Below, piece by piece: positions 5,405 to 55,900 of a stretch of DNA of 64,000 nucleotides. Each line of letters opens with the position of its first letter. Within the stretch, counting starts at the first letter, position 1. The notes under the pieces were generated by a model. That model ran no database searches, had not been told where the DNA came from, and worked only from the letters and a program-made list of their open reading frames with translations. Made by a program: the position numbers and the translations under genes. The stretch comes from Hypanus sabinus (Eukaryota), in assembly GCF_030144855.1 (NCBI RefSeq), contig NC_082713.1:51088001-51152000 (forward strand), read 5' to 3'.

Positions 5405-5765
5405 AAAGATTGCAGATGCTAAAACTCTGAAAAAACTGAAAATGCCGGAGGTCACTCAGCATCTGTATAGAGACAAATAGAGTAAGCGTTCACAAACATG
5501 AGAATCTGCAGATACTATAAATCCAAGCATCACAAACAAAATGCTGGAGGAACTCAGCAGGCCAGGCTGCAGGGTCTCAGCCTGAAATGTCGCCTGTACT
5601 CTTTTCCATAGTTGCTGCTTGGCCTACCAAGTTCCTCCAGCACTCTGTGTGTGTTGCTTAGAGTAAATGTTATAGATTCTGATAAAATATCATCAACCTG
5701 AATTGTTGACTTTGTTTCTTTGTCTATAGATACTGTCTAACTTGTTAAATATCTCCAGTATTTAT
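5405..5765. mobile_element. Penelope-derived fold-back element (5491-5658) nested in an older copy of the same family
   Basis: Inverted arms GCTGGAGGAACTCAGCAGGCCAGGC / GGCCTACCAAGTTCCTCCAGC; imperfect 13-bp TSD TAGAGTAAGCGTT (5478-5490) / TAGAGTAAATGTT (5659-5671); partial hammerhead GGGTCTCAGCCTGAAATGTC. Confidence 0.7.
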
Positions 5766-8294
5766 TAGTCTTAGTACTTCTGACTTTGTAATCTTAATAG
5801 CTGTAAATAGATCAGACCACCAAGAAATTAAACTAAATCATTTTGATCACAGTTCAGTATACAGAGCTAAGTGAAATTTTCAACTATAGCAAGCAATTGA
5901 TATAAATCTCATGCAACTCTCACATTAATTTTCCAACACATGGTGAGTTCTAATTGCAGGAAAACATTTGGAGAAATATAGTCAATGAATGGATGAAGAT
6001 TTTGTCCAGTACAATACTAAGGGTGGGGTGGGGGGAGAGAAGCATAATCCCCCTGTCAATTTCATTTTTATATTAATTGAATTGATAGTACATGGAACAG
6101 AAATTAGCCATGATAACTAATCTCAGTACTTTTGATCTGTAGAGAACATTATTCTTGTGCTGGAGGGTGTTTGTGTGTGAATGCCCATGCATTTGCTCGA
6201 AAATAATTTAATCCTTTGGCTCAAGATAAAGTTAAACAATACCACCAAAGTTCGTTAATAAACAATGGCCATTTGCTTGAGTTGTCAATGTCTGTAAAAC
6301 AAAGAACATCATGATTCAGATCTCCAAAAGTGATGGGAGTGGTAAATGACAAATGAGGAGAATGAATCTTAGAAACTGTGTACATCCTGAAATAGGGTAG
6401 AGTAAGGTAAAAGGCTCAATTGAGGTCAGGGAGTATTTTGCTCTGGCAGTAATTACACATCAGCTTAAGGTGTCAAGGATAGGTCTTTTGTTCAGGCAAG
6501 CCGAGTAGAAAGGATAGGGAGAATATAATAGGGAATATTGTCATGGCATGTTCAGGTTGAGTACCATTGATCTCAAGGGATGTGGCGTGAGGCAAGTCAA
6601 TTATTTCCCTGTAATGCAACCAAATGAATGACAAAAAATAAATTCCTGATCAACAGTTCTTGCCATTGCTGCCAACTTTCATAAATTCACAAGGTTTAAG
6701 GTTGAAGATGAAACAGCTTTAGCTCGTTGAGACCTGATATTCATTTGACTTCATTTTATTTTCTTTCTTCACTCTTGGACTTCTTAGATGTGCCAGAATC
6801 AGTGATTCTGCCTGCAGTAGCCTTTTCTTGCTATTTGCACTATCAGTAGTGACAGCTATCTAAATCATTTTGTGAAATCCTTCATATTTGAACCCAGTTT
6901 ATCAGGAATTATGTAGCATTTGGAATTACTTTATAAATAAAAGTTGTTGAATATGTCGTTATCCATCTGACAAAGTCAGGGTGGGCATCTAATTTTGAAA
7001 CAAGTTATCAGTAGCTTTCCAAGTGCACATTTTAAAGTTCTATTCACTGAAGATCTTGCTGCAGTTTCAGAAATTATCTGACACATTAAAGAATTAATAC
7101 TATACAAGTACCATGAGACCAACTTTCACATGTATGATATATTGAGTAGGCAAAACAGGTTGATCTCTACAACCACACACTAAACTGATCATCTGCTAGG
7201 CAGTAGTGATCCCTGGCTTCCTGTTTTTCGGTTCCCAGTCTTCCTACAGCACGGGATAGATACTACCTATGCCGTCTGCAAAAAAATCTTTCAAAATTCA
7301 ATTTAAGAATAAGTGAACCAGTATCAGTATTATCTCTCAGGTGAATATCCCCCTCACTGATGCCCTAATTACATTCCATTCCATTGGGCCATGTAATTCT
7401 TATGCCCAACACCAGTACCCCAACACAATATATTCCAAGCTCTGTTATGGGAAGAGATTACAAGGTTGACAAAGGATAGAAGTAAGGAATTTGCTCACTT
7501 TCCTTGATAAAGTGCAATATCACCACTAGTTCTTGAGAATCCTTGGCCCTGACCATTCAGAATAGCAAAGAAATAGTTGATATCAAAAACCTCAAGTCCT
7601 TACATTGGGAACAAAGAAAATCACTGTGCATTTGGCAGGAGGAGCTCACCACCCACCATTTAGCCCATGGAAGAGTCCACAGTTTTCATATGGGTCACAT
7701 CAGTCTCTTCCAAACATAAACAAATGGAGTGAAAGCAAGTTATTCTACAGTCTAGGGATTGATAAAGAAGAGGAATACAAATTGACTGCTACTTCTGCTC
7801 CACATAAGCAAAATACTGTTTGTTTTGTTTGATGCTTGGGTCTCATTTAAATTTGATTAGCAAGTTGCCAGTGCTAATTGTGTTGTTTGGCAGTTTGGGA
7901 AATCTGTGAAGAATGTTGCATTTTAAAGTGACTACATTTTCTAAAGCAAAAGTGACATAGAAAAAAGTACACTGTTGAAACAAAAACAGCAAGTAGCCTA
8001 GTTTATGAGTACTAGCATCAAGGTAGTTTTTGAACGTGTCAATAAAGTAGATAAGCAAGGTAACAACCCATAATTCTGTCAACACTTCCAATTTAGAACA
8101 AAAACACAAATTTTCTAAGATTTGTTGGTTAATTATGGAGCATCTTTCCTTGTAGTAGCTCATGGCATCATGCAGTGAATATCTGACCTTTAGACTACAT
8201 TCAGGGGTGGGATCATTAGCACTAACGATAGAGGTAGTAGTGCAATCACTCAAGTCAAGTATTATGTTTTCCTAAGGGGTTGTTCCCTTAATGG

Positions 8295-8615: not shown

Positions 8616-10009
8616 GGCTTAGGGTTGACAGAACCTTATCAATATATGATAAGTCTAATGACAGGAGTTTCATTGTTGGTTGAAATACGAAAGGCAGTGT
8701 TTCTAAAACAATGACTTTTTTTCTGAAGCTTGCTCATGCTCCAATAACATGTGATCATCAAAAGGCAGATCACTGCAATAAATATAAAGTGTTTAAACTC
8801 TCAATGCTGTCACAACTTCAGCACTTATGTTAGTTTTGTCTCTGTTGCTCTTTATTGTTCCCACTGCAGATGTTTCAAGCACCAAAGTTTTAACTGTTGA
8901 ACTAACTTTTTCTTCAACATCAAACCCTTGTAAAATAATGCATAAAAATGCTGGAGGAATTCAGCAGGTCAGGCAGCATCTACAGATAGCAATAAGGAGG
9001 ATACTTCAGGTCTATAAAAAATTAAGTTTTATATCAAATGAAATTCCTTTATAAGGTTATTCAGGTTTATTATGGGAATTTGAACCTGCTGCTCTTTTTC
9101 AGATATTTTGAAGGAAAATAGAACACAGAAATCTATAGCACTTTCACAGGCCCTACGGCCCACAATGTTGTGCTATACAAATAACCAACAGGTTACAATG
9201 AGACCTGAGACCCTCCCCTATTCGTGTGATTACTTTGAGTACAGGAGAGGAGATATGAAATGCTCAGATATAAACCTTTTCACTCTGGAAATCACTGGCC
9301 ACTCTTCAAAGCCATCGCATCTTTCCTTATGTAGTAATATTTCTCACAAGAATCGAAATGCAGTCCAACCAGCTCTATACAAAACCACAATACATTCTGG
9401 CTTTGATACCCTTGAAATAAATGCAAACATTCCATTTGCCTTCTTTCATCTCACTTGCAAGTTAACCCACAGGAAATCCTGAACTCGTTCCCCAGTCCCA
9501 TTGAACTTCAATTTCCAAATTTTCTCCATTTTCCTTTCTCTTACTATTAATTAGGGATCCCACTGATAGTGAAGCAGATCATAATGAATTGCATAAATAT
9601 CTGACTGGTCAGGAAATGGGGTGAGGAACAGCAAGTGGAGTGATGCATTTTGCACCATCAAGCAAGTGAATATGAAAAATTATATTAAAAAACCCTACTA
9701 GACAGCAGGAGCAAACTGAACCTGCTGTGCTAATTGAATTCTCACAAGCCACATGCACCAAGAAATACAAGTTGAACATATGGAAAAGCGAGAAAATTTG
9801 TTGTTTCTTTAATTTATTGTCTGCATAAATTTGATGAGTGAATTTTTATTCTGCCATGTTATATATTCTATATTTTTTGTGATTTGTGAAAGGGCAAATT
9901 TCTGTTACCTGAACTGCCCTATTACAGGGCTACACTGTGCTTTCAAGTACATAGGCTAGCAAGTGGTTGGTAGTAACCTGAATGCACAATGACAAATTAG
10001 GGATGGCAA

Positions 10010-10990: not shown

Positions 10991-13900
10991 GTTTTGGAGT
11001 TAGGGCCATTACAAATTGTTAGTATCTTTCAAGAGATCAGAAGCATTTGTTAGGAATAATGGGGTAAACTTCCTTTCCAACAACCTTCTTAAAGGTTGAT
11101 TGTGTGGTGAGCAACAAATTTTGACCTAGCCATCACTGCACGTATCACCGGAGAAGATAACTTGGAACATATTTAAATGCAGTTGTGGTATTCATATAGA
11201 AGATCTATATAACGTGTTGAAACGTGGTAGCTCTCAAAGCATCAGGCAGCTAATGAACTTCTGCAGATGTAAACGGAGGAGTGTTCCATCAAAATGTCTT
11301 GGAGTCATTCAGCATGAAAACAGGCCTTTCAGCCCAACCTCATCCATGCCAATTGTGTTGCCCAGTGTGCTAGTCCCATAGCCCTCTAAACCTAACCTAT
11401 CCATGTACTTATCCAGATAGTTTTTAAATGTTGCTAATGTGACTGCCTCATTGACTATTTTTCACATACAAGTTTATTATCATCTGACTATACATATATA
11501 CAACCAATAGAAACAATGTTCTTCTGGATCATGGTGCGCCCACAAAACATATATCACACACAGCACATAAAACAATAATATTACCACAAATAAGTTAATG
11601 AAACTTATTCATAAAACTTGCAGTATGCAGCACAACAACTCGCTGTCCTAGCGATGAGATCTGGTGGTGGCAGGTATTCGCTAATCTCACAGCCTGAGGA
11701 AAGAAGCTGTTACCCAGTCTGGCATTCCTGGTCCTGATGCTCCTGAACCACCTCCCTAATGGTAGTAGGTCAAAGTGATTGTGGGATGGGTGGTAGGTAC
11801 CCTCAACAATGCTACAGGCCTTGTGTATACATTCCCAGTAAATGTCACAAGTGTAGTGGGGGGGGGAGGACCCCAGTGATCCTCTTAGTGTGTTTTTACT
11901 ATACTTACTATTAGCAGCTCATTTCAAATACACGCCACCCTTTGCATGAAGGTGCCACTGATAAATAAATAATTATCATTTATATTGCAGAACCTGCAGC
12001 AGGAGATTTTCTATGTAATCGTTTTATGCTCTTATTTCCTGTACAGTTGTGCTTGATTCCTTGGTCAGGAGTAATTTTTGAGCTGTGGTGCTTTACACTG
12101 GTGCAAGGAGGGATTTAAAGCACATTTGGAAACTTGACATTGCAGAATTTTGTTTCATTTACATTCTACCACTGCAAAGAGAATGTATGTGCAATACTTC
12201 AATACCTGATAAATAAAGTTTTGTACTATTCCATTTCATGACACAGTTGAACTAGGCATTGGGACTAAAAGTGCATTTTGGGTCCTGGGGTGTGCTTGGA
12301 GTAGTTAGCTGAGTGATCAGATGCCTGATAATTTTCTCTTTTCCATTGTCTGTTGCCGTGCACTGCTCGTCATTATTGGCACAGTGGAATTAGAGTTCAC
12401 AGATCTGATTAACTTGGAATTGATGTTAATTGCAGGCCTTTTATAGTGATTGTGCTTTTCCCTGGAGCTGACAGTTGCCTTCTATAATTTAACTACTCAA
12501 TAAGATGGTTTATTCATGTCAGCAGAAAACCAAGTGGGCTTAGAGTGAGCAAAATCTCAACCCGAAACATTAACAGTTTATTCCCCACCATAGGTGCTAC
12601 CTAACCTGCTGAGTTCCTCCAGCGTTTTGTGGGTTCTTTTGATTTCCAGCATCTGCAGAATTTCATATGTTTATGATTTACTGCTGCACTTTGAGTTGGT
12701 GTCATTTTCCTCTCGAGGTGGCTTCATAAAGTACACTCTGGCCACTTTTATTTGGTACATCCTGATGAAGTGGTCACTGTTCATGATTTTCTGCTGCTGT
12801 AGCCTATCCACTTCAAGGGTTAACGTGTGTTTGAAGATGCTGTTCTGTACACCACCGTTCTAACGCATGGTTATTTTGTTACTGTCGCCTTCCTGTCAGC
12901 TTTAACCCGTCTGGCCATTCTCTCAGACCTCTCATTAACGAGGAGTTTTCACCCATAGAGCTGGATGCACTTTTTTTTTGCACTATTGCCTAAACTGCTG
13001 AGACTGTTATACGGGAAAATCCCAAAAGACCAACAGTTTCTGAGGTTTTCTGAGATACTCAAACCATCCCATCTAGCACTGACAATCATTTCACGGTCAA
13101 AGTCACTTAGATCACATTTCCTCCCCATTCTGATGGTTGGTCTAAACAACGATTGAACCTCTTGATCATGTCTGCATGTTTTTATGCATTGAGTTGCTGC
13201 CACATGATTGGCTAGTTAGATATTTTCATATTGAGAAAGGGCACAGCTGTTCCTAATAAAGTGGCCGGTTCGTGTATGTTCCCAAGGGCAAGTTAAGAAA
13301 AGATGTTTGTTATTTTTAGCTTGTCTTCACTAAAATTGTCAGTTGACTGACATAATTTCAGAAACTACCTCATAAAGTAACTGAGAAGTTAATATTATGT
13401 GATTTTAAGTAATTTCCAGTAGTTAGGACAAAAGAATGTTTTTGCTTCACATAATTAGTGCATATGAATTGTGAATGAGCTTGTATCTGTCTATTTCAGA
13501 GATTTACTTTTCCTTGGTGTGGAAGAGGAGGATTTGTTTAAGACTAAATATTCCTTGACTGCCAGCGAAGATGAGGTAATAACTTCTATATCTTGAGGTC
13601 TTCTTTAAATTATTCTTTGAAGCAGTAATGGACAATCAGAGTCAAGTTTATCATTGACAGTGCATTACATAAACATTCTATAAATTGCAAGAAGAAATAG
13701 ACTGTTCAGAAATCTCATGGAGGAGGTGAAGATGCTGTTCCTAGAACATTGAGTGTGGGTCTTCAGGCTCCTATACTTCCTTCCTGATGGTGATAATGAG
13801 AAAAGAGCCTGTCCTGAGTGGTGGGGATCCTTAATGACGGGTGCTTCCTTTTTTTTTTGGGTATTGGCTTTTGAAGGTATCTGATGCTGGAGAGGCTAGT

Positions 13901-37900: not shown

Positions 37901-40900
37901 GATGGGACGGCACTTAAGACTTGCAGTCTGAACAAGAATTATTGGTATCATTTGGTTCTGAAAATAAAACTCGGCTTGATTCTAAATGCACTTTTCTTGT
38001 TTTACTTAAGGCACGAGAACGTCGAGCTGAGCTGCAGAAAGCAAGAGCCCTTCAGTCATATTATGAAGCTAGAATGAAAAGGGCAAAGAAAATCAAGAGC
38101 AAAAAGTAAGAGTTGCAGTTTCAGAATTAGTTTCTTTAATTGAAAAAAAACTCATTCCTTGTTGATAATGAGCCTGATCTTATTAGACCTGTGCATGTTA
38201 TAGTCATACTATATGGAAACAGGCATGTCAGACTACCATGTACTCATTTGTATTAATCCTATCTTCCAGCACTTGTTCCATAGCCTTCTATACCTGAGCA
38301 ATTCAAGTACTCAACTAAGCACCTTTTAAATGCTTTTAGTGACTCTGTTTTCATCAGTACATTCCAGGTACTCACCACTTTCTGGGTGAGAAAGCTTCTC
38401 AAACAACCTCTAAATTTGTAACTCCTTACCCTAGCTTTATGTCCTTCAGTTTTATTCATCTCTCATAGAGGAAAAGTTTCCTGCTGCTTACTCTGTACTT
38501 CTCTTTCATTATTTTTATATACCTCAATAATGTTCCTTATTAACTTCCTCTTCTAAAGGGAAAACCGGCCTCACCTCTCAAGTCTCTCCTAAAAACTGAA
38601 ATGCCCAATCCCAGGAAACACCCTGATGAATCTCCCATGAACCCTCTCCAATGCTATCACACCCATCCTATGTTGTGTTGACCAGAAATGCACACAGTAC
38701 TCCAGTCTGACCTATGTTTTAGAAAAGTTGAAGTGTAAATTCCACACCCTTGAACCCCAGTATCTTGACTAGTGAAAGTCAATATCATATATTTCTTCTT
38801 AACCATATCACTTACCTGCACTCACAAAATGCTGGTGGAACACAGCAGGCCAGCCAACATCTGTAAGGAGAAGCACTGTCGACGTTTCGGGCTGAGACCC
38901 TTCATCAGTCCTGACAATTGTGAGGTCGACAGTGCTTCTCCTTGTAGATGCTGCCTGGCCTGCTGTGTTCCACCAGCATTTTGTGTGTGTTGTTTGAATT
39001 TCCAGCATCTGCAGATTTCCTCGAGTTTGCACTTACCTGCACTGCCACCTTCCAGGGTTTTTGGACTTGTGCACAATAGTCCCTTGATGTGACAAATTAA
39101 ATCAGAGTGCAAATTAGTGTTCCTGATCAGGCAGTAATAGAGGGCCAACAGTGTAATGAAGGCTTAATGCCAGATGACTATGGTCTTTTCTGTTGGATGC
39201 CAGATTCTACACCCATGTTGTGTAGTTTGAAGATCTGATGGAATCCCAGGGGTCCAGGTCCTTCTAATTTGAGCTTGAATCCATGTAGATTGAATCACAT
39301 TTACACAGTTATAGGGATCATTGATGCACATTTTTTTCATATTTCTGCATATCTTTAGATATTTTTGGTCAATATTTTCCACAAACGTAGAATGATAATT
39401 CAGTATCTGAAGGACTACGACTCTATAGATTAAACAATTCAAACTAGAGCAGAGGTTTATTTGCAGTCATTAACAATTATCAAGTCATTAAAAAGATTCT
39501 TCGAAGGCTGGCTACAAGATTTATAGTGAGTTTGATAGACTGCCCATTAAGTAACCTAAGTCTGAAGTAGAGAATGTCATGGAAGAGTACAGTGCAGAAA
39601 TAGGTCATTTGGCCCATCTGGTCCATGCCAAACATTTAAATTGTCTACTCCCATCGACCTGCACCTGGACCATAGCCCTCCATATCCTTACCATCCACAT
39701 ATGTATGCTTGTTCCACACTCACGACCCTCTGAGTGAAGTAATTTCCTGTTGTTCTCTTTAAACTTTTCACCTTTCACCCTTAACCAATGACTTCTATTT
39801 GTAGTCCCACCCAACCTCAGTGGAAAAAAGCATGCTTTCATTTACCATTTCTATACCCCTCATAATTTTGTATGCCTCTATCAGATTTTTCCTTATAACT
39901 CAGGTCCACCACTTTCAATGAATTATATACCTGTATTCCTAGATCCCTTTGCTGTACTGCACTCCTCAGTGTCCTACCCTGGTTGGTCCTCCCACAATGC
40001 AACACCTCACAATTGTCTACATTAAGTTCCATCTGCCATTTTCAGCCCATTTTTCCAGCTAGTTCAGATCCCTCTGCAAGCTTTGATAGTCTTCCTTGCT
40101 GTCCACTACATCCCCAATCTTGGTGTCATCCACAAACTTGCTGATCCAGTTAACCATATTATCATCCAGATCATAGATATAGATGACAAACAAAGCACTG
40201 GTTCTGTGGTACTCAGCTAGTCTAATCAGAAAGGCAACCATTTGGTACCACTCTCTGGCTTTTCCCCATAAAGCCAATGACTAATCCAATATTCTACCTC
40301 ATTTTGAATGCCGAGTGACTTCCATTCTGGACCTTGTCAAAGGCCTTGGAAAGTCCAAGTAGACAACCTCCACTGCCTTGCCTTCATCAACTATCCTGGT
40401 AACTTTCTCGAAAAACCCTATAAGGTTGGTTGGACATGACCTACCACACACAAAGCCATGCTGACTATCTCTAATCAGTCCATGTCAATCCAAATACTCA
40501 TATCCAGTTCCTTAGAAAACTTTATAACAACTTTCCCATTACTAATGTCAGGCTCACCAGGCTATAATTTCCTAGTTTATTCTTAAAGAATGGAACAACA
40601 TTAACTATCCTCCAATCCTCCGGTACCTCACCTGTTACAAATGATTTAAATGTCTCTGCTAGGGCCCCTGCAATTTCTGCACTTACCTCCCAAAGGATCC
40701 AAGGGAACATCTTGTCAAGGCCCTGGGGATTTATCAACTCTTAATTTGCCTCAAGATTATAAAGACCACCTCCTCTATAATCTATATAGGGTCCATGACC
40801 TCACTGCTGCTTTGTCTGCCTTCTATAGACTCTGTGTCTGTCTCCTGAGTAAATACAGATGCAAAAAAAAAACTCAATTTGAGACCTCCCCCATCTATTT

Positions 40901-43900: not shown

Positions 43901-46900
43901 CGATTTTTTTAATATATTTGTTAATGATTTGGATGATGGAATTGGTAGCTTTGTTGCAAAGTTTGCAGATGATATGAAACTAGGCAGAGGGACAGGTAGT
44001 TTTGAGGAAGTAGAGAGGCTACAGAAGAATTAGACAGATTAGGAGAATGGGTAAAGAAGGCAGATGTGTCAGGAAGTGTATGGCCATGCACTTTGGTAGA
44101 AGAAAAGAAAGAGTTGTCCATTTTCTAAATGGAGAGAAAATAGAAGAAACTGAGGTGCAAAGGGACTTGGGAGTCCTTGTGCAGGATTCCCTAAAGGTTA
44201 ATTTGCAGGTTGAGTTGGTGGTGCAGAAGGCAAATGCAATATTAGCATTCATTTCAAGAGGACCAGAATACAAAAGCAAGGATATAATGTCGAGTCTTTA
44301 TAAAGCACTGGTGAGGCCTCTCTTGGAGTATTGTGAGCAGTTTTGGGCCCCTTATCTCGGAAAGAATGTGCTGACATTGGAGAGAGCCCAGAAGAGGTAC
44401 AGAAGAATGATTCTGGGAATGAAAGGGATAACATAGCATTTGATGACTATGGGCCTGGAATTCAGAAGAATGTGGGATAATCTCATTGAAACCTATCGAA
44501 TAGTGAAAGGCCATGACAGAGTGGATGTGGAGAGAATGTTTCTTGCGGGAGAGTCTAAGACCAGAGAACACAGCCTCAGAATAGGTGAGGCATCCTATTA
44601 AAACAGAGATTAGAAGGAATTTCTTTAGCCAGAGGGTGGTGAATCTGTGGAATTTCTTGCCATGGGCAGCTGTGGAGGCCAAGTCTTTATGTATCTTTAA
44701 GGCAGAGGTTGGTTGGTCAGGACATGAAGGGATATGGGGAGAAGGCATGAAATTGGATTAGTCATGATGAAATGGCAGAGCAGACACGGTGGGCCAAATG
44801 GCCTAATTCTGTTCCTATATCTTATGGTCTCATTCCTTATCATTTTAAGTATTTTGTGATAAGTGCTACACCTCCTCCCTCCAGATAGTGCAAAAGACTG
44901 TAAGACATTGGAGCAGGCTTAGGCCATTCGGCCCATCGTGTCTGCTTCATCATTCCATCATGGCTGACTTATTATCCCTCTTAATCCCATTCTCCTGCTT
45001 TCACCCCATAATCTTTGATGACCTTACTAATCAACCTATCAACTATCAACCTATCAACCTATCAACCTATCAACTATCAAACTATCAACTATCAACCTAT
45101 ATTTTAAATATACCAAATGACCTGGCCTCCACAGCCATCTTGGTAATAAGTTCTACTGAGTCACCTCCTTCTGGCTAAAGAAATTCTTCCTCATCCCTTT
45201 TCTAAAGGGAAGTCCTATTCTGTGCCTTCTGCTCCTGGACTCTCCTACTATTAAGAAACATCCTCTCCATGTCCACTCTATTTGGACTTTTCAATATTTA
45301 ATAGGTTTCAATGAGATTCATTCTTGTTCTTCTAAACTCAGGATGTAATTATTGAAAACATTGTATGAAGGAAGTCTATTATCTACACTTGCACAGCAAG
45401 TACAAACACAGACTAAGAAACTCTTCTCATAAGTTAACCCTGTCATTCTGTGGACCGCCAGCAACGCTGTCACATCCTCTCCTAGATAAGGTGCGAAAAA
45501 CTGCTCACAGTAGTCCAAATGCAGTCTGACTAATGCCTTATAAAGCTTCAGCATTATATCTGGCTTTTATATTCTAATCCTCTCAAAATGAATGCTAACA
45601 TTGCATTTGCCACTGACTCAACCTGCAATTTACCTTTAAGGAATCCTGCACAAGGACGTCCAAGTTATGTTGCACCTCTGATTTCTGAATTTGTTTTCCA
45701 TTAGAACATAGTTTACACTTTTATTCTTTCTATTGAAGTACATGACCTTACACTCCCTACACTGTGTTTCATTTGCCATTTCTTTGCCGGTTCTCCTAAT
45801 CTCAGTCCTTCTGCAGATTCCTTTCTTCATCACTACCAGCCCCTTCATCTTTCTTTGTTTCATTCACAATCTCAGCCACAAAGCCATCAATTCCAGCATC
45901 CAAACTATTAACATATAGCGTGAAAAGCGGTTTTAACACCAACCTCTGCAAATCACCACCCGTGGGCTCATAACTTGTTCGGCAGCCTCATGTGTGGCAC
46001 CGTTTCAATGGCCTTCTGAAAATCCAAGTAAACAATATTCACTACTCTCCTTTGTCTATCCTGTCTGTTTTTCCTCAAAGAATTCCAACAGAAGTATCGG
46101 GCAAGATTTCCCCTGAGGAAACCATGCTAACTTCAGTCTATTTTATCGTGTGCCTCCCAGTACACAGTAACTTTATCCTTAATAATGAATTCCAACATCT
46201 TAACAGTCAGGTTAACTGGCCCATAATTTCCTGTCTTTTGCCTCTCACCCTTCTTCGTGTGGAGTGACATTTACAATTTTCCATTCCTCTGGAACCATTC
46301 CAGAATCTAGTGATTCCTTTCAGGTGAGGTGACATTTCACCTGCAAGTCTTTAAGAGTCATCTTTTGAATCCGATGCTCCTGGTGTAGCCTCCTTTATGT
46401 CGGTAAGACCCAGCACAGATTGAGAGACTGCCTTTTTGAGCACCTTTGTTCTATCCAGCAAAAAAAGTCATGATCTCCCTGTGACCATTTCAATTTGACT
46501 TTGCATTCCCATCCTGACATGTCTGTCCATGGCCTCCTGTAACTGCCGTGATGTGGCCTAGCTCAGGTTGGAAGAATGGCTTCTCATATTCTGCCTGAGC
46601 AGCCTCCAGTCTGATGGTGAGAACATTGATTTCTCCAACTCCTGGTAATCATTCAACACCCCCCCCCTTTTTTTAATTCCCTATTTTGGTTAGCCTCTCA
46701 CCCCCTCTCTAATCCTCACCTGCCTATCAGCTCCCTCCTGTCCCTCTCCTTCACTTTCTTCCATGGTCCACTGTCCCGTTCTTTCATATTCCTTTTTCAA
46801 CTCTTACACCTATCCCCTCGCAGCTTCTTACTTCACCCCTTCCCCCACCCACCAACTTCCCCATCAGCTGATCTCTCCTATCACCTGCCAGCTTCTACTC

Positions 46901-49900
46901 CATTCACTCACCTTTCCCCTTATTCTGGCTTCTGTCCCCTTTGCAGTCCTGAATGAAGGATCTTGATCCAAAACATAGACTGGTTATTCCCCTCAATAGA
47001 TGTTACCTGGCTTACTGGGTTTCTTCAACATTTTGTGTGTTCCCTTTAATTCTACAGGTTTTCATTATTTCCTTATATATGAACCATTTTCAAAGTGTGC
47101 TGTAGCAGAAGTACAAGAAATAAAAGAAATGCAATCAGCAGGCCAAATTTTTATCAAAGGAGTCATTTAAAGAATTGTAAGAGCAGATTTCTGTTCACTT
47201 CATAATTTTAAGAAGCAGCAAAGTACTTTCTTTCTGTTTGAACCACATTCTGACAATCTGAATCATTCCTATGAGCTGTTTGTGAAACGTATTTTGTTTC
47301 AACTATTCTGAATTAGATAATGATTATACATAGATAAGCAGTTGCTAGAGTTTTAACAGCTTTATTTATGTTTTGATTGCTACCAAACTTGATCTAAGTA
47401 ATGATCCCTTTGATTAAAATACAGGAAATTACGATGGGTTTGTTCACATGTTGCCAGCTTCATCTGTTTGAAATATTTAAAAACTTTTATTAGTCTTGAT
47501 AGCACTAACATTCTGGCTTTTTTTGATCCAATTAGTGTCACATCAATGATCTTAGAGTAGTCATAGCTTTCTAAATTCAGTTAATTATACTAATTTGTAA
47601 TTTAAAAAATACAAATTATAATACCATGTTTAAATGTATTGCAATTTCTGCTGTCTCAGGTCTCCTAAAAGATTGAGTAAAATAAAATATGTTGTCTTTT
47701 ATGTGATTGGTACCAACATACCCAATAAACAGCATGTCATTGTGCACTTCAGGCATAATTCTGATTGTTTGAATTAATTTTCCTTCTCTACTATCTTTTC
47801 TTATACCATTACTATCTTAATTTGCCATCACCTCCTAACGCTCTTGTTTCAGGAGCTTCATGACAAATTCTAGCAGCGTCATACTGTCATGATGTGAAAG
47901 ACCTGACTTAAGATTTTGTTTAACTCTGTCAGCGAGGTAACAGGAGAAAGTAAAATAGGTTTAACTTATTGTCTTATGCATAAATACAGTGAAGTACAAT
48001 ACAATGAAAATCTGGTTTGCAGCAGTATGCCTGTCATGTAGGTACAGACAATACACAGAATATAAGTTGTACATAAAATTATGAAATACAGTGGGTGGTG
48101 GGGGAGTCCGGGGTCTGCAAAAACAGGACTTGATACTCAAAAAAGGCAATTGAAGAGAAGTCCATGGTAGTGCTAGAAGTGATGCTCAATCTTCTTTTAA
48201 TCAGAATCAAGTCTAATATCACCAAGTCTATATCATCGTGAAATTTGTTGGTTTGTGGCAGCAGTACTTTGCAATATATAGTATTAACTATAAATTACAA
48301 TAAAAAGTATATACTCAAAATAAATTTAATCAAAAAATAAGGGAAAATACTGAGGAAGTGTTCATGAGTAAATTTCCATTCAGCAGTCTGATGGTGGAGG
48401 GGAAGAATTTGTTCCTGAAACATTGTGTTTGTGTGTCCTCGAGCTCCTGTACCTCCTTGATGGCAGTAATGAGAAGAGGGCATGTCCTGGAGATGGATGC
48501 ACTTTTTTAAGGCATCACCTTTTGATGGTGCCCTGGATGATGGGGAGGGTAATGCCTACGATGGAACTGGCTGAGTAGCCTCTCCATACCAGATGGTAAT
48601 GCAGTCCGTTAGAATACAGTCACTTTTCTTCTTTTATCTCTCATCCGTCCTAACTGGTCATCCTCCTGTTCTTTATATATGTATAGGACACCTTGGAGTT
48701 TTCCCTAATGGGACCTTCTTGTGTCCCCTTTTCGCTCTCCTATTGAAGGGAGTTGTGGTTACTGTGTCGGAAGTGCTCACCCACAGAGATCTGTCACCTG
48801 ACTAGTAACAGTATGGCCTCTCCTCTACCTGGCCTGTCTGTATATTGTGACAGGAATCCTGATGGTTGTAGGGAAATTGCTGTTCCTGAACCTGGTAGTA
48901 TGGGACTTCAGGCTTCTGTACCTCATGCCTGATTATAAAAGCAAGAAGAGTGCAGGGATTCTTGATAATAGGTGCTCCCTTCTTGAGGCAGTGGTTCCTG
49001 TAGATGTGGAAGTTGATAGGTTCTTGATTAGTAAGGGTGTCAAAGATCAAAGATTACAGGGAGAAGGCAGGAGAATGGGGTTGAGAGAGGTAATAAATCA
49101 GCCATGATGGAATGACTCAATGGCCCGAATAGCCTGATTCGGCTCCTGTTTGTTATGGTCTCATTTATTTCAGTGATCTGAATTCCAGCTGTGATATGTC
49201 ATCACCAAGTGACCAATGTAAAGACCTCACTTGTCAACTGAGCAACTTCTGGGTGTGGACAGTAAGATGGATGCTGCTTGGCTACTCTCTCTTAACATTT
49301 AGGCCTTTTGATTCTTTCACAGCTCCAGGAGAGGTGTAGGAAATTACCCACGTTGGTGGCTTGATTGGAAGCTTTGGGCCAAACTGGAATGAAATGTCCA
49401 GAGGGCCACACCCATAGATTATGTTTTGTACCATGATCCCGAAGACTTGAAAATAATAGAAGGAGCTAATGCAGAGATCAGTCAGATAACTTTGATATGC
49501 ATGAATAAGCCAACAAGCACAATGAAAATACATTATTATTGCTGGCAATAATAACATAGAAGAACTTGCTTGGGGAAGAAAAGATTAAGTGATCTCCTGG
49601 ATGTAATTAGAAAAAAATGAGATTCATCCAAATATTGAAGCGGAACCAGATAAGATACTAAGCGTACAGTAGAGTTAAAATTTTAGAAAAAATTGCAAGT
49701 AAATTGCATGATGATGTATGCATATATCTGGCCAAATTAATAGTGTATTCAGTCATAATGAAGGTTCTCAGCCTGAAACGTCGACTGTTAATTTGTCTCC
49801 ATGGATGCTGCCTGACCTAGCAAGTTCCTCCAGCGTTTTGGGTGTGTTACTCTGGATTTCCAGAATCTGCAGATCAGTTGTGCTAATAGTGTGTGATTTA

Positions 49901-52900
49901 GTGATTTTGTTTAAAATGAAATTTTGTAAGCCTATTTAACCTGACTGTTTGAAGCATATTTGCTGAATGGTGTATATTTAAATTCATAGGTTCCATAAAA
50001 TTGTGAAGAGAGTTAAACAAAAGGAGATCTTGAAGAAGTTTGAAGAACTAAGGAAGACTAATCCTGAGGCAGCTCTTGAGGAATTGAATAAAATGGAACA
50101 AATGCGAATGGAGGTGGAAAATCACATCTACTTAACTTTATATAGTCTACACATTTATGTATAGGCCATTATTTGTTTACAGCATCCAAACACAAAAAGT
50201 GCTAGATGCTTTAATAAATCAGTATCTATTTGAATTGCTACATTTGGGAGTAGTATAGTTCTTAAAGGGAAGTCAAGTTCATCGTTCATCCTTACTGCTG
50301 TTTATTTGGTAGGATCATACACACACATGCAGTAACTACTGCTAAGTTTTTATTAGTTCATTTATATATTGTGCTATGCAGTCCTTTCAATTTGTCATGT
50401 TTAGTATTTAGCTTTGACAGTATGTTGCATATTGACTTTATGGGTGCTGAATTTAGCAATTAGTCATAGAAAATGACAGTACAGAAACAGGCTTTTCTAC
50501 CCATCCAGTCCATGAAGATTCATTTATTCAGCCTGGTCCCCATCGATCTGCAACTGGACCATAGCCCAGTACCCTTCTCATCTGTGTACCTATACCAACG
50601 TATCTTGAAAGTTGAAATCAAAATTGCATCCACCACTTGCGCTGGCAGCTCATTCCACACTTTTACCACTCCAAGTGAAGAAGTTTCCCCTCATGTTCCC
50701 TTTTCATCCTTAACCCGTGACCTCTAGTTGTAATCTCAACCAACCTTAGTGGAAAAGGCTGCTTGCATTTACCCTGTCTATATCCTCTAAATTTTGTATA
50801 CATCAATCAAATCTTCTATGTTCTAGAAAATAAAGTTCTAACCTATTCATTCTTTCCTTATCTCTTCCCGGCAACATCCTTGTAAATTGTACTCTTTCAA
50901 TCTTATTTCCTGCAGGTAAGTTGGCCAAAACTGCACACAATACTTCAAATTAGGCCTCATCAATGTAATGTACAACTTCATAACATCCCAATTCCTGTAC
51001 TCAATACCTTGATCTATGAAGGCCAATGTGCACATGCTTTTTTAATGACTTTATCTACCTGTGATGCCAATTTCATTGAGTTATGGACAGGTATTTCCCA
51101 GATCTCTTTGTTCTTTGTACTCCTCACTGCTCTATTGTTCACTGTAAGAGACCTACCCTGGTTGGTCCTCCCAAAGTGCAACACCCCACAGCTGCTTACA
51201 TTAAATTCCGTCTGCCATTTTTCTGCCTATTTCTCCAAACAGTCCAGATTCCACTGCAAGCTCTGATAGTCTTCCTCGCTTTCCACTACACACCCAATCT
51301 TAGTGTCATCTGCAAGTTTGCTAACTAAGTTATCATGTAGATCATTGATATAGACAACAAACGACAATGGACCCAGCACTGATGCCTACACCATTCTGGT
51401 AGTCACAGGCCTCCAGTCAGAGAGGCAACCATCTACTACCACTCTCTGGCTTCTCCCACAAAGCCAATAACTAATCCAATTTCCTTATCTTGAATGCCAA
51501 GCAACCAAACTTTCTTGACCACCCTCCCATATGGGACTGTGTCAAATGCCTTGCTGAAGTCCATCTAGACAACATCCACTGCCTTGTCTTCAACAACTTT
51601 CCTGGTGACATCATTGAAAAATACTATAAGATTAGTTAGACGTGACCTACCACACACAAGGCCATTCTGACTATCCTTAATCAGTCCATGTCAATCTAAA
51701 TACTTGTATATCTGGTCTTTTAGAATACCTTCCAATAACTTTCCCACTAATGGTGTCAGGCTAAAATGCCTAAAATTTCCTGGTTTATTCTTGGAGCTTT
51801 TTTTAAACAGTGGAACAACATTAGCTATCCTCCAATCCTTCAGTACCCCACCTGTCTCTAAGGATGATTTAAATAAATCTGCTAGGGCCCCAGCAATATC
51901 TGCACTTGCCTCGCATGGTCCGAGGGCACACCTTGTCAGGCCCTGGGGATTTGTCCATCCTGTTTGCCTCAGGACAGCAAACACTTCCTCCTCTGTAAAC
52001 TGTATAGGGTCCATAACCTCACTGCTGCTTTGCCTCACTTCCATAGACTTTGTGTCTATACAGATGCAAAAAATCCATTTAAGATCTCCCCCATCTCTTT
52101 CAACTCCATGCATAGATTACCATTCTGATTTTCCAGAGGGTCAGTTTTGACCCTTACAATTTTTTTTTGCTCTTAACATATCTGTAGAAGTCCTTAGGAT
52201 TCTCCTTCACCTTGACTGTTAGAGCAACCTCATGCCTTTTCTTAGCCCTCCTGATTTCTTTCTTAAGTGCTGTCTTGTATTTCTTATACTCCTCAAGTAC
52301 CTTATTTGTTCCTACCTGCCAAAACCTGCTATGTAACTCCTTTTTTTTTCTTAACCGGAGCCTTTATATCACTCAGAAACCAAGGTTTTTAAACCAGATA
52401 GCTTTACCTTTTATTGTGACAGGCGCATACAAGCTTTGTACTCTGAAAATTTCACTTTTGAAGGCCTCCCACTTACCAAATACACCTTTGCCAGAAAACA
52501 GGCTGTTTCAATCCACACTTGCCACATTCTTTCTGATATTGTCAAAGTTAGCCTTTCTGTAATTTAGAATCTCAACCTGAGAAGCAGACCTATCCCTTTC
52601 CATAATCACCTTGAAACTAATGGCATCATGATCACTAGATGCAAAGTTCACAAATTTCTGTCAGCTGCTCTGTTTCATCTCCAGACAGGGGATTTTGTTG
52701 GGACTTCTACATTTTGATTAAGTAAACTTACTGAGTGCATTTGGCAGACTCTATCCCATCTAGTTCTTTTACAGTATGGAACTCTCAGTCTACATGTGAA
52801 AAGTTTAAAATCACCTATTCAAATCATTTGTTTCTGCAACCTCTATATGAATTTATTCCTCTAAATCCCACTGATGTTGGTGGTCTATAATATAGCCTCA

Positions 52901-55900
52901 TTAATGTGGTGATACCTTTCTTAATCCTCAATTCTACCCACAAAACCTCACTGCAGTCTCCAGTCTGTCCTGACTGAGCACTGCAGTAACATTTTCCCTG
53001 ACTAGTAACACTGCTCCTCCTCCTTTAACCGCTCTTGCACTATCACATCTTAAACAACAGAACCCCGGAATACTGAGCTTTTTGTACTTTCATGGAGAGT
53101 GTATCTCAATGACAGGACCAACACTTATTGTCCATCCCTAATGTTTTGGCATGTTCAGCCAATTAAGAGGACACCCAAGGGTAAATCACATTATTTTATA
53201 TTTGAGTCAGATGAAGGCAATGGATTTACTACCTTGAAGGGAATTACTGAACCACATTGTTCCCAAAACAACCCTCCACTGATCCTATGGCTACTGTTGC
53301 TCCACAATTGTTTAATTATCTGAATTGAATTTCTCTAGTAACTGTACTGGGGTTCAAGCTCTCATCTCCGGATCTTTGCTTCAGATTCTGGATAACTAAT
53401 CCACTAACATAACCACCATGCCATAATGCGAGGAACTCTGCAGATGCTGAAAATTCAAGCAACACACACAAAGTGCTGGTGGAATGCAGCAGTTAGTCCT
53501 GATGAAGGGTCTCGGCCCGAAACGTCAACTGTGCTTCTTCCTGTAGATGCTGCCTGGCCTGCTGGGTTCCAGTAGCATTTTGTGTGAGTGACCATGCCAT
53601 AATGCCCTGTGATCTGCTTGTTATAGTATTGCATTGAATTATTTCTAGGCTTCATTGCCATGACACTTGGGCAGCAATAATTGGTCATTATAGGATCCAA
53701 TGGTTGGAGCATTTTCCCAATTCGATGTCAATACGGCCTTTGACTTTTTCTTCCTTATTGAAATGCACCCCTTACATTGTTATGAGCTCAGCATGCACAT
53801 CTAACTATACATCACCACCATGAGTCTTGACTGGTTCATTGGTCCATGCTGGCAGACTGCCTGTTCAAACTGCTATTTAGATTTGGATAAGCCACAATTT
53901 ATGCAGTGTAACATGAGTCATTGCCCAGAATCTGGGTTCACTTCTCAAGAAATATTTGGTCTTAATCTCATGCAATTTCCTTGATGGGAATTGACTGATG
54001 AGGAAGTTACCTGTCCATCATACATGTCCCAGTTGTGGAGCTTCTCTGACATTCCAGGACATACATTAAAAAGAATTCTTCAAACTTTTTTTATCTAAAT
54101 AAAATTACACAATATTTAAAGATGTGTGAAATGACCTGCTAGAGGAAGTGACTGACAGAGGCACTTATCTACATTTAAAAGTTACTTGGACAGGTACATG
54201 GATCGGAAAGGTTATAGGCATTTGCATCAACCATGGCAAATGGGACGAGTGTAGATGGGAATCCTGGTTAGTATGAACTGGATGGGCTGAAGATCTCATT
54301 TCTGTGTTGTGTGACTATAAACTCAAACCCTTTTTTTCAATAATATACTTGATTTACTAGTACTTTGTTTCTTGCAGCTATTGATTAAACATATTTTAGT
54401 AAGAAAAATAGTGCCAAATTTCCCAATGACAGAAAACCATTTAAACCCAATTTTGTTTTGTTTTAGCAAAGAGCAGGCCGTTTCCAAAAATGACCAACCC
54501 CATATTCATTCTCATTATAATTGTTTTAACTGTGAATGAAATATATTCTTGGTTAACTAGAATTATCCCAATGGATATCTATATTCAATATTTTAAGTCA
54601 GAGAACTGTAAGTTGTTTCTGTTCTCTGGTCTTAATGATTGTTGATGGCAATAGGATTTTCCTTCTCTGTCAGTTATCTCTCTTGTTTGAAGTTCCAAGT
54701 GTTCCTGATGACAGAAATTATTTACTAATAGAGATTATTTAATAACTAATCTATGTGAATAGATTTACTGAATGTAGAGTAGTTTTGTAATTGGGTGTAA
54801 GCACATTTAGCTATATGTCTTAGTTACTTATCCATCATCTAATTTAAACCACAGCAATGAGTTTTTGTTCAATATGAAGCTATTAATCAGTTGATTTAGA
54901 ATCTAATAAAGGAAAAATAGTAAGTAGAATATCTGTTTTTGTTACCCAGATTAGCAACTAAATGATCCTATCTAAAATGAAGGCATTGCTTGTTTTTAAA
55001 GGACCCACAGCTATTGCCATTGCACGTGAGAGTAATGGAGCGAATAAATGAGGCAAAAGAACTATAAGGGGGAGAGATTATATATATCTAGATAGGAGGT
55101 TGGAAGACCAAATGACAGTGCATGGAATCCACAGTCTAACAAAGTCAGATGCTCTAAAACTATTCAGAATGGCCTACACAGTATGCCTATGGAGATGATA
55201 TAAATATCTGTAATCTGATTTTTTTTGTTTGTAAAATGAATGTTTTAGCTTTTCAGAAGTGTGTTGAAAAATCAGTTATGAAATAACACTCTTTCCTTTT
55301 TAATATGCATTCAGCTCTTTATAGGTATTGAACACACTTCTGACAGTTAACTTATTTCTATGCTATTAGTGGAACATTGAAATAATTGCCCGTTTTAATG
55401 GGGATTTACTGAACTGTTCACTGGTGGGAGTTATTGAATTATTAAACCAATAGGCTATGAAAGAGAACAAATAATGTATGTAACAGTCTCTGATTGTGCT
55501 TGTAATCAAAAAGCTGAAAGAGTGCTTGAACGTACAGACATCAGATGCTAGTAGTCTTAGCATTTTAGCAATCTGTTATTTCTTTGAGGGTGGAAAATAT
55601 TTGTATCATCATTTTATTGCTGCAAGTTGGAACAATGAAACTCCTTTAAACGTTATAAAGCTGTAACTGAGCACTAGACTGCGTAGTAATTTCACAATCT
55701 TGAAGTCAGTGGAAATTTCCACTTATATTTCATATGAGCAACAACCAACATTTTACTTTTGCAGTCAAGGTTGTTGCACAACTGAGTTGTTGGTTGCATA
55801 TAAGGGATGACTTTTTTTCTCATTATTAGGAAAGGATGTCGCTCCGGCACCAAAACAGTGGAAAATGGGCCAAATCTAAAGTTATCATGGCAAAATATGA

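What the first reader, a model, noticed from the sequence alone, without database searches (positions are those of the whole stretch)
5405..53605. At least seven related hammerhead copies reconstruct an intact consensus and link coding PLE remnants to short hairpin derivatives
Seen: copies near 5571, 23582-23618(-), 24366-24403(+), 38881-38908(-), 46944-46982(+), 49750-49787(+) and 53494-53531(+), plus a weak trace near 12550. They share CTGATGA-AGGGTCTCRGCCC-GAAAC-GTC-GACTG and the tail GATGCTGCCTGRCCTGCTG...TTCCAGCATCTGCAG. Two loci attach the motif to a GIY-YIG ORF and the rest have no coding sequence. Each copy has different lesions: 49750 has a perfect stem I but a broken core, 53494 has a perfect core, and 24371 has GAAAC changed to AAAAC. 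Inference: the ancestor was a functional ribozyme, and about one copy per 8 kb would imply a very large genomic hammerhead family. Every sense-strand intronic copy has a lesion, which could reflect selection against pre-mRNA cleavage or only CpG decay.
Basis: partly seen in the sequence, partly recalled or inferred. Interest (0 to 1): 0.72.

Follow-up and report, generated by a model that had tools for sequence, protein, structure and literature searches.

The report
Dead Penelope retrotransposon ends with hammerhead motif
The repeated "hammerhead" copies are real, but they are the cut-short and often folded-back tail ends of one very abundant Penelope-like jumping gene of a ray or skate, and that kind of element is already known to carry this minimal self-cutting RNA motif, so the finding is correct but ordinary.

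Summary
Observation confirmed. The window holds about ten independent insertions of one repeat family. Nine arms carry all or part of a hammerhead (HHR) motif: CUGAUGA, an extra A, a GGGU/GCCC stem II, GAAA, the palindrome ACGU, and the cut site GUC^G.

- **Motif identity:** it has every sequence hallmark of the minimal hammerhead of metazoan Penelope-like elements (PLEs), described by Cervera and de la Peña in 2014.
- **Link to the PLE:** two insertions continue upstream into a GIY-YIG endonuclease remnant. Its best relatives are stingray and skate proteins and full-length RT plus GIY-YIG PLE proteins.
- **The "short hairpin derivatives":** they show the published PLE insertion anatomy. That is 5' truncation, an adjoining inverted 5'-truncated copy, a 35-44 nt tail at one end only, and 8-15 bp target-site duplications. 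No trans-mobilised derivative family is needed.
- **Lesions:** they concentrate on the motif's four CpG sites. Non-CpG hammerhead positions vary less than the tail. Single minimal hammerheads are reported inactive as monomers, so selection against pre-mRNA cleavage is neither needed nor testable here.
- **Abundance:** contigs of public runs pile up about 100,000-fold over the element.
- **Not tested:** cleavage and expression.

An earlier agent of this scan reached the same verdict on another window of this genome. Novelty is low: a new member of a known kind.

The parts
53430..53590 (+). Fold-back insertion c53. Inverted 5'-truncated arm with tail at 53430-53492. Forward arm at about 53493-53590, with an intact hammerhead core at 53499-53526 (predicted cut after C at 53526). 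The base after the cut site has changed G to A at a CpG. Lies in a sense-strand intron of Utp14.
   Evidence: 15-bp target-site duplication ACCATGCCATAATGC at 53415-53429 and 53591-53605.
38822..39029 (-). Fold-back insertion c38. The forward arm runs 38913 down to 38822, with an intact hammerhead core at 38881-38908(-). The 5' strand of helix I is replaced by junction filler. The inverted arm with tail occupies 38924-39029 and ends at the GTCGAC of the cut site. As RNA the element folds into one long hairpin (-127.8 kcal/mol) that buries the 3' strand of helix I.
   Evidence: 13-bp target-site duplication at 38809-38821 and 39030-39042.
49747..49883 (+). Single forward 5'-truncated copy c49, starting at helix I. 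It has CAGTC/GACTG, but the core box is ATAATGA (C3 and G5 changed). The long tail is present. It lies about 100 bp upstream of a Utp14 exon.
   Evidence: 9-bp target-site duplication TAATAGTGT at 49738-49746 and 49884-49892.
46294..47060 (+). Older 5'-truncated PLE copy c46. GIY-YIG remnant with stops at 46294-46639, then about 300 nt of 3' UTR, a decayed hammerhead at 46944-46982 (G12 to A, and other changes), then the tail. Stem II carries a compensatory G-C to A-U change.
23524..24486 (-). One insertion with two arms (c23/c24). The forward arm runs 24170 down to 23524: GIY-YIG ORF remnant at 23838-24215(-), 3' UTR, hammerhead at 23588-23615(-), no tail. The inverted arm is 24172-24486 read on +: hammerhead at 24371-24398(+), with tail. 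The arms are 91.7% identical over 290 bp. Both hammerheads have G12 changed to A.
   Evidence: 9-bp target-site duplication at 23515-23523 and 24487-24495.
5486..5658 (+). Fold-back c5-inner. Inverted arm with tail, joined directly to a forward arm that starts inside stem II, so the CTGATGA box was never there.
   Evidence: 8-bp target-site duplication TAGAGTAA at 5478-5485 and 5659-5666.
5405..5768 (+). Older fold-back c5-outer, into whose centre c5-inner inserted. Inverted arm at 5405-5477. Forward arm at 5667-5768, with a strongly decayed hammerhead trace at about 5679-5715.
   Evidence: (hits 5483-5423(-) and 5693-5762(+)), 34
12549..12665 (+). Single forward copy c12. The 5' half of the hammerhead is absent or decayed. 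The GAAAC region, spacer and long tail are present.
8949..9013 (-). Tail-only copy c9. It starts close to the position of the hammerhead cut site and has no long tail.
   Evidence: The possible 7-bp target-site duplication is weak.
4775..4870 (-). Tail-only copy c4, with the long tail.

Best explanation
These are about ten independent, dead-on-arrival insertions of one very abundant, probably Neptune-like, endonuclease-bearing Penelope-like retrotransposon (PLE) of an elasmobranch, most likely a ray or skate.

**What each insertion is.** Each is a 5'-truncated copy of the element's 3' end. The full layout is: end of the GIY-YIG ORF, about 215-300 nt of UTR, the minimal type-I hammerhead, about 65 nt, the usual 3' end at ...CATTTTGTGTG, and an optional 35-44 nt tail.

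**The hammerhead.** It is the known PLE minimal hammerhead. It has no helix III of its own. The ACGU at positions 15.1-16.1 can pair only with a second copy, so it is expected to act, if at all, as a dimer in transcripts of tandem full-length elements, and possibly only with help from the element's protein.

**The fold-backs.** They arise because PLE protein cuts both target strands and primes reverse transcription on both. This gives two 5'-truncated cDNAs head to head. In all four clear cases here the inverted arm starts at the distal start site (tail present) and the forward arm at the proximal one.

**After insertion.** The copies decay neutrally, fastest at the four CpGs inside the motif.

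**Shown here:** sequence anatomy, family membership, target-site duplications, link to the endonuclease, abundance, CpG bias.

**Inferred:** the two-strand priming origin, dimeric or protein-assisted cleavage, and the clade.
For: - **Motif hallmarks.** Core boxes, extra A between A9 and G10.1, G10.1-C11.1, palindromic 15.2-16.2, short open helix I. Seen; these match the definition in PMC4209133.
- **Contiguity with the endonuclease.** GIY-YIG remnants lie directly upstream at two loci.
- **Relatives.** 1892 hits. The best are Hypanus sabinus and Leucoraja erinacea proteins. The long relatives are RVT_1 plus C-terminal GIY-YIG, preceded by CX3-4CxxC.
- **Insertion anatomy.** Target-site duplications of 8-15 bp flank five insertions. 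The inverted 5'-truncated arm with a one-sided tail, seen in 4 of 4 fold-backs, matches the published PLE structure (PMC8557442). Two-strand cleavage and extension with two RT start sites is published for a Poseidon PLE (PMC11167929).
- **Variable truncation.** Junction and truncation points differ from copy to copy.
- **Most genomic copies continue into the same 3' UTR.** Shown by the loose-end consensus before 53495. The same table shows continuation into the tail behind 53586, and a huge pile-up over the element.
- **CpG bias.** CpG sites differ at 12/40 positions, non-CpG hammerhead sites at 12/125, the tail at 55/274.
Against: - The existence of an intact autonomous master with this tail therefore rests on the cis-linked endonuclease remnants and on unchecked earlier notes.
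- Rfam models do not recognise the motif.
- No cleavage or RNA evidence was obtained. All runs were contigs, and the one guessed-RNA run covered neither the unique intron nor the Utp14 exon.
- The clade rests on a motif in relatives, not on a phylogeny.
- The divergence statistics use only five independent copies and a consensus drawn from those same copies.
Confidence: 0.87

Rival explanations
1. The short 140-210 bp fold-back and single copies are a distinct non-autonomous family, retrozyme-like or SINE-like. It would derive from the PLE terminal repeat and be mobilised in trans by PLE protein, possibly through cleaved or circular RNA.
For: - The terminal 100-200 bp is far more abundant than the coding part. 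In this window 8 of 10 insertions lack coding sequence, and there is a large pile-up.
- Non-autonomous PLE derivatives are proposed in the literature (bioRxiv 10.64898/2026.07.22.740005; non-autonomous Chlamys elements in PMC8557442).
Against: - Excess of 3' ends is what 5' truncation gives by itself.
- Every short copy has a different 5' or junction point.
- No tandem arrays are present.
- The loose-end consensus shows that many genomic copies run on into the PLE 3' UTR.
- The inverted arm and one-sided tail are features of autonomous PLE insertions as well.
Confidence: 0.09
2. Lesions in sense-strand intronic copies were favoured by selection, because intact hammerheads would cut the host pre-mRNA.
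For: - Xenopus retrozymes are reported to be depleted in introns.
- All three sense-strand copies in Utp14 introns (c46, c49, c53) carry at least one change.
Against: - The antisense copy c38 and the copies outside Utp14 are damaged too.
- c53, the least damaged copy, is on the sense strand.
- Lesions sit mainly at CpG sites.
- Monomeric minimal hammerheads show no detectable cleavage (PMC4209133).
- The Anolis PLE hammerhead needs the element's protein (PMC11167929).
- The sample is far too small.
Confidence: 0.03
3. The hammerhead-like motif is a chance resemblance in an ordinary repeat and never had ribozyme function.
For: - Rfam hammerhead models give no hit even at E up to 10.
- The minimal descriptor is short.
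- Published in vitro activity of such motifs is low.
Against: - All 11 core positions are in the right order.
- Features beyond the core boxes are present: the extra nucleotide at 9/10.1, G10.1-C11.1, and palindromic ACGU.
- The motif sits beside a PLE endonuclease gene, exactly as published.
- Its non-CpG positions are more uniform than the neighbouring tail.
- An old subfamily copy has a compensatory change in stem II.
Confidence: 0.02

Closest known systems
Minimal hammerhead ribozymes (min-HHR) in the pLTRs of metazoan Penelope-like elements (Cervera and de la Peña 2014, PMC4209133)
   Same: - Type-I layout with open helix I of 4-5 bp.
- CUGAUGA and GAAA boxes, with a GUC cut site.
- An unpaired nucleotide between A9 and G10.1, and a G10.1-C11.1 pair.
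- No helix III loop, with palindromic 15.2-16.2, implying dimeric action.
- Mostly dispersed single motifs from truncated PLEs.
- Pairs on opposite strands 100-700 bp apart.
[quoted passage not shown]
   Different: - The host is a cartilaginous fish (a ray or skate, judging by the nearest proteins). The passages of that paper that I read name no cartilaginous fish.
- Helix II here is only 4 bp with a tetraloop, against 6-8 bp in the Schistosoma and Drosophila examples.
- Abundance looks higher, of the order of 1e5 by contig pile-up. That figure is not a calibrated copy number.
Poseidon PLE of Anolis carolinensis (PAc; Frangieh et al. 2024, PMC11167929)
   Same: - A hammerhead lies about 65-100 nt upstream of the element's genomic 3' end.
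- There are two alternative 3' ends separated by a 30-40 nt tail.
- The protein cuts and extends both target strands, which explains inverted arms.
- An ATG lies inside the CUGAUGA box, about 25 nt before the cut site.
   Different: - In PAc the ORF starts in the hammerhead. Here the reading frame from that ATG is not kept between copies.
- The 3'-end region is GU-rich here, against an AC-rich stem-loop in PAc.
- The clade is probably Neptune rather than Poseidon.
- No biochemistry was done here.
Structural arrangement of PLE insertions (Craig et al. 2021, PMC8557442; Evgen'ev and Arkhipova 2005, as cited in that paper)
   Same: - Heavy 5' truncation.
- An inverted 5'-truncated copy abutting the forward copy.
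- A 30-40 bp tail at one end only.
- Target-site duplications.
- A CCHH-type GIY-YIG domain. The relatives have a CX2-5CxxC motif before it.
   Different: No partial tandem (direct pLTR) arrangement is seen in this window. The fold-backs here are extreme miniatures of 160-210 bp.
Metazoan non-LTR retrozymes (Cervera and de la Peña 2020, PMC7229834; Li et al. 2026 preprint)
   Same: - They carry a type-I hammerhead.
- They are evolutionarily linked to PLE pLTRs.
- They can be very abundant in vertebrate genomes.
   Different: Retrozymes are tandem repeats of 170-400 bp with canonical hammerheads (helix III stem and loop, loop-loop contacts) that yield circular RNAs. Here there are no tandem arrays, and the motif is the minimal variant.

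Membership tests
PLE minimal hammerhead (min-HHR) | Conserved core: C3 U4 G5 A6 N7 G8 A9, then G12 A13 A14, then A15.1-U16.1 and H17 at the cut site | tested here: met
   Exact in c53 (53499-53526) and c38 (38881-38908). The other copies differ by 2-3 substitutions, mostly CpG transitions.
PLE minimal hammerhead (min-HHR) | Unpaired nucleotide between A9 and G10.1, and a G10.1-C11.1 pair closing helix II | tested here: met
   CUGAUGA-A-GGGU(CUCG)GCCC-GAAA in all well-kept copies. In c46 the third helix II pair has changed from G-C to A-U.
PLE minimal hammerhead (min-HHR) | No own helix III; palindromic 15.2-16.2, so that two copies pair (dimeric ribozyme) | tested here: met
   GAAA-CG-UC gives the palindrome ACGU with no loop. 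Actual dimer formation and cleavage were not tested. The cofold runs are not specific.
PLE minimal hammerhead (min-HHR) | Short open helix I (4-5 bp) flanking the core | tested here: met
   CAGUC/GACUG in c49 and in the family majority. In c38 it was truncated or replaced at the junction. In c53 it is weakened by a CpG change.
PLE minimal hammerhead (min-HHR) | Self-cleavage of RNA, as a dimer or with protein help | not testable with these tools
   Only contigs of public runs were available, so no molecule ends could be seen (table 6: none).
Penelope-like element, endonuclease-bearing | C-terminal GIY-YIG endonuclease with internal CCHH, next to the terminal repeat | tested here: met
   The ORF remnant at 23838-24215(-) and the remnant at 46294-46639(+) align to the C-terminal ends of 800-920 aa proteins. 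Invariant Y, I, C, C, Y, G, T, H and N columns are seen.
Penelope-like element, endonuclease-bearing | Telomerase-like reverse transcriptase in the same ORF | tested here: not met
   No PLE RT lies in the window. Full-length relatives hit only their endonuclease part, because all copies here are 5'-truncated. The relatives P0028, P0031, P0065 and P0099 do have RVT_1 plus GIY-YIG.
Penelope-like element, endonuclease-bearing | Insertion anatomy: 5' truncation, adjoining inverted 5'-truncated copy, one-sided 30-40 bp tail, target-site duplication | tested here: met
   Four fold-backs, each with the tail on the inverted arm only. Target-site duplications of 8-15 bp. Compared with PMC8557442.
Neptune clade of PLEs | CX2-5CxxC zinc-finger-like motif upstream of GIY-YIG, and phylogenetic placement of the RT | tested here: inconclusive
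   The motif is present in the nearest relative P0001 and in the long relatives. It lies upstream of the truncation point in the window copies. No RT phylogeny with named references was possible.
Non-LTR retrozyme | Head-to-tail tandem repeats of 170-400 bp, each with a canonical type-I hammerhead | tested here: not met
   Tandem Repeats Finder shows no such array. The copies are dispersed or inverted, and the motif lacks helix III.
Rfam hammerhead families (Hammerhead_1, Hammerhead_3, HH9, HH10, Hammerhead_II) | Covariance-model score at or above the gathering threshold | tested here: not met
   No hit at gathering score in the whole window. No hammerhead hit at E up to 10 on 53400-53620. This is expected for a motif without helix III.

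The most novel reading that the evidence does not exclude
The family may be the largest hammerhead-bearing repeat family yet seen in a jawed vertebrate outside salamanders, of the order of 1e5 copies.

Separately, the 5' ends of its insertions may cluster at the hammerhead. Five of ten insertions here start within about 20 nt of the motif. The inverted arm of c38 and the tail-only copy c9 end at or next to the GUC^G cut site. That clustering would be in vivo evidence that the minimal PLE hammerhead cleaves the template RNA before or during reverse transcription. Frangieh et al. (2024) looked for this in Anolis RNA-seq data and did not find it.
Probability: 0.15. Interest if true: 0.5.

Novelty: new member of a known kind. 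Interest (0 to 1): 0.2.

Why it matters
The main value is for annotation. A 100-200 bp repeat occurs every 6-8 kb in this elasmobranch genome. It can look like a SINE, a MITE-like hairpin or a microRNA precursor, but it is the truncated end of a Penelope-like element that carries the known minimal hammerhead.

This places cartilaginous fishes among the vertebrates with very large min-HHR families. It also supplies clean natural examples of the PLE insertion products predicted by two-strand priming: fold-back, one-sided tail and target-site duplication.

It does not reveal a new ribozyme class or a new mobilisation mechanism.

Tried and rejected
- **Rfam.** The scan at gathering score and a permissive scan of c53 gave no hammerhead hit. 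There were only weak chance hits to microRNA and snoRNA models, caused by the hairpin and the UGAUGA box.
- **First motif search.** I used a spacer one base too long and it found nothing. Corrected.
- **The look-up of encoding contigs.** I called it to fetch the stingray and skate loci and look for a full-length element with the same tail.
- **Metagenome scan.** An exact scan for the 31-nt hammerhead found nothing. I did not use the second scan, because exact matching suits a decayed repeat poorly.
- **RNA evidence.** No listed run is on record as RNA, and all are kept as contigs. The guessed-RNA run X7 shows the family, but it covers neither the unique intron nor the Utp14 exon at 49982-50161. 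It may therefore be low-coverage DNA, and nothing can be said about expression, cleavage or circles.
- **Empty-site test in the other coded organisms.** Contigs break inside the repeats. They do enter c49 and c53 from the unique flanks in X1 and X2, and on the right-hand flank only in X5, so the insertions look shared; no empty site was seen.
- **An ORF starting at the ATG inside CUGAUGA, as in Anolis PAc.** Rejected, because the frame is not kept between copies.
- **An 8-bp 'target-site duplication' for c5-outer.** Rejected as chance, because the forward arm runs through it.
- **RT-like tblastn hits of P0002 elsewhere in the window.** These are not PLE, since full-length PLE proteins do not hit them. 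P0002 may be a chimeric gene model.
- **Utp14 exons.** I searched them one by one by reference and did not join them into a spliced model.

Full report
**Context.** The window is vertebrate DNA. GC is about 38% and CpG observed/expected is 0.26, with one N run at 294-489 that I left untouched. Three exons of a Utp14 gene lie on the + strand at 31753-31914, 37918-38106 and 49982-50161. They match Pfam Utp14 at profile positions 84-137, 176-208 and 208-253. I searched these exons separately by reference and did not join them. A weak COG6_N match lies on the - strand at 19338-20003.

- A profile built from the named copies recovers eight arms that carry the hammerhead region, with E from 1e-21 to 5e-27. 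It also recovers seven tail-only pieces.
- The core pattern CTGATGA-N13-GAAACGTC is matched exactly at 38881-38908(-) and 53499-53526(+). With up to 3 mismatches it is also matched at 23588, 24371 and 49755.
- The tail 31-mer has 6 matches against 0 expected.
- Self-comparison shows that c23 and c24 are the two arms of one inverted pair, 290 bp at 91.7% identity. The sequence between them is homologous to the sequence upstream of c46.

**What is upstream of the motif?**
- The ORF at 23838-24215(-) is a GIY-YIG remnant (Pfam E=0.015). The c46 homologue has the same reading frame with stops.
- Against 1.84 billion representative proteins the 107-residue remnant has 1892 hits.
- The best hit is 74% identical: a Hypanus sabinus protein named mucin-2 by its source. 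Others come from Hypanus and Leucoraja erinacea.
- The long hits of 800-920 aa have RVT_1 followed by a C-terminal GIY-YIG domain. The window remnants align to their extreme C-termini. That is the architecture of endonuclease-bearing Penelope-like elements.
- The nearest relatives carry a CX3-4CxxC motif just before GIY-YIG. Craig et al. give this motif as typical of the Neptune and Nematis clades. I therefore call the family Neptune-like, as an inference.
- There is no PLE reverse transcriptase in the window.

**What is the motif?** Read as RNA it is CAGUC / CUGAUGA / A / GGGU-CUCG-GCCC / GAAA / C-G / U-C^ / GACUG.
- Cervera and de la Peña (2014) defined the minimal hammerhead of metazoan PLE terminal repeats by four features that go beyond the core boxes:
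  - a conserved G10.1-C11.1 pair;
  - no helix III, with palindromic 15.2-16.2;
  - a short open helix I.
- They also noted that most genomic motifs are single and come from truncated PLEs, and that pairs occur on opposite strands 100-700 bp apart. All of this is seen here.
- Rfam's hammerhead models do not score it. That is expected, because helix III is missing.

**What are the "hairpin derivatives"?** I mapped the ends of each insertion.
- Target-site duplications flank c38 (13 bp), c53 (15 bp), c49 (9 bp), c23/24 (9 bp) and c5-inner (8 bp).
- The family has two alternative 3' ends. The short one is at ...CATTTTGTGTG. The long one lies 35-44 nt further on, at ...CAGCATCTGCAGAKTTCCTC.
- In all four clear fold-backs (c38, c53, c5-inner, c23/24) the inverted arm has the long end and the forward arm the short end.
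- The junction between the arms lies at a different place in each copy:
  - in c53, within the tail region of the inverted arm;
  - in c38, at the GTCGAC of the cut site;
  - in c5-inner, within stem II of the forward arm;
  - in c23/24, within the endonuclease ORF.
- This is the published PLE insertion anatomy: heavy 5' truncation, an inverted 5'-truncated copy next to the forward one, and a 30-40 bp tail at one end only (PMC8557442).
- The purified Anolis Poseidon protein cuts and extends both target strands. It starts reverse transcription at two internal sites, and the interval between them is the tail (PMC11167929). This gives a direct mechanism for head-to-head arms.
- The short hairpins are therefore miniature ordinary PLE insertions. 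They are not evidence for a separate trans-mobilised family.
The cis-linked endonuclease remnants answer it within the window, although I could not fetch an intact full-length copy.

**Lesions.**
- The 38-nt motif holds four CpGs: loop 2, C11.1-G12, C15.2-G16.2 and C17-G1.1. The 55-nt tail holds none.
- In six full-length motifs, 14 of 24 CpGs are lost, and 13 of those losses are TG or CA transitions (read).
- Over five independent copies, CpG positions differ from the majority at 12/40 sites and non-CpG hammerhead positions at 12/125 (p=0.003). The tail differs at 55/274, which is more than the non-CpG hammerhead positions (p=0.009).
- My reading is that the motif was held constant among source elements, while the tail varied between subfamilies. 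After insertion the motif decays mostly through methyl-CpG deamination. The sample is small and the consensus comes from the same copies.
- The strand idea finds no support. Sense copies in Utp14 introns are c46, c49 and c53, and the antisense copy is c38. The least damaged copy is the sense copy c53.
- Published work reports no detectable cleavage of a single minimal motif. It also reports a need for the element's protein in Anolis, with no RNA-seq ends at the cut site.
- In c38 the whole element would fold into a hairpin of -127.8 kcal/mol that buries the 3' strand of helix I.

**Abundance and age.**
- I laid contigs of four public runs on 49500-53800 at 80% likeness. Summed depth is about 2.1e6 over c53 and 3.2e5 over the c49 tail, against about 20 in unique flanks. 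The tool warns that this is not a copy number, but it fits a family of very many copies.
- The consensus of loose ends to the left of 53495 is the PLE 3' UTR, and to the right of 53586 it is the tail. So many genomic copies are longer than c53.
- Contigs from the unique flanks run into c49 and c53 in two of the three coded organisms (X1, X2); in the third (X5) only the flank to the right of each element does. The insertions are therefore probably shared by all three.
- All runs are contigs, so starts, ends, strand and circles could not be examined. The guessed-RNA run covers neither the unique intron nor the exon, so expression remains unknown.

**Comparison and verdict.**
- The finding is a correct recognition of a known thing: minimal hammerheads in truncated Penelope-like elements.
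- It is not a retrozyme. There are no tandem arrays and the hammerhead is not canonical.
- A 2026 preprint already links vertebrate hammerhead repeats to PLE terminal repeats. It includes one cartilaginous fish and reports intron depletion in Xenopus.
- This scan has noted the same family on at least eight other pieces of this genome. An earlier follow-up agent reached the same verdict elsewhere. I reached mine from my own tests.
- What is perhaps new is the host lineage, the very high abundance, and the clean 4-of-4 polarity of tail and arm. The possible clustering of 5' ends at the hammerhead is anecdotal and needs a genome-wide count.

Noticed in passing
window 38822-39029, 53430-53590, 5486-5658, 23524-24486: In all four clear fold-back insertions the 35-44 nt tail extension is on the inverted arm, and the forward arm stops at the proximal 3' end. 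This suggests a fixed polarity: which target strand uses which reverse-transcription start site.
   Followed up: partly
window 38913-38925(-), 9013(-), 49747(+), 53493(+), 5571(+): Several insertion 5' ends or arm junctions fall within about 20 nt of the hammerhead. The inverted arm of c38 ends at the GTCGAC of the cut site, and tail-only copy c9 begins close to it. This could be chance, or a trace of template cleavage. It needs a genome-wide count.
   Followed up: no
window 5405-5768: One fold-back (5486-5658, with an 8-bp target-site duplication) inserted into the centre of an older fold-back of the same family. This is nested self-insertion.
   Followed up: partly
window 31753-31914, 37918-38106, 49982-50161 (+); 59147-60049 (+): Utp14 exons lie on the + strand (Pfam E from 1.7e-13 to 1.3e-3). 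A 301-codon acidic open frame at 59147-60049 may be a further exon, but it gave no Pfam hit. c49 lies only about 100 bp upstream of the exon at 49982.
   Followed up: partly
window 19338-20003 (-): A 222-codon open frame has a weak COG6 N-terminal match (E=8.6e-4). It may be the first exon of a divergently oriented neighbour gene.
   Followed up: no
window 50400-53100, 40975-41887, 39973-40312, 43419-44344, 45400-46316, 27216-27546, 16097-16555, 3696-3911: Other abundant retroelement fragments, with LINE-type RT pieces and a typical 'LYKALVR.HL.YC' C-terminal motif at 45318-45554(-). They are also heavily piled up in the public runs. They are not part of the PLE family.
   Followed up: no
proteins P0001, P0003, P0008 (Hypanus sabinus RefSeq models): Public gene models named mucin-2 and ATP synthase subunit C3-like, and one with DUF4518, end in this PLE endonuclease. 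They are likely annotation chimeras caused by the repeat.
   Followed up: no
window 49500-53800 versus runs X1, X2, X5: Unique flanks in all three coded organisms share the same differences from the window, at about 1.5-3%. The window's source therefore differs from all three, or it is another haplotype or population.
   Followed up: no
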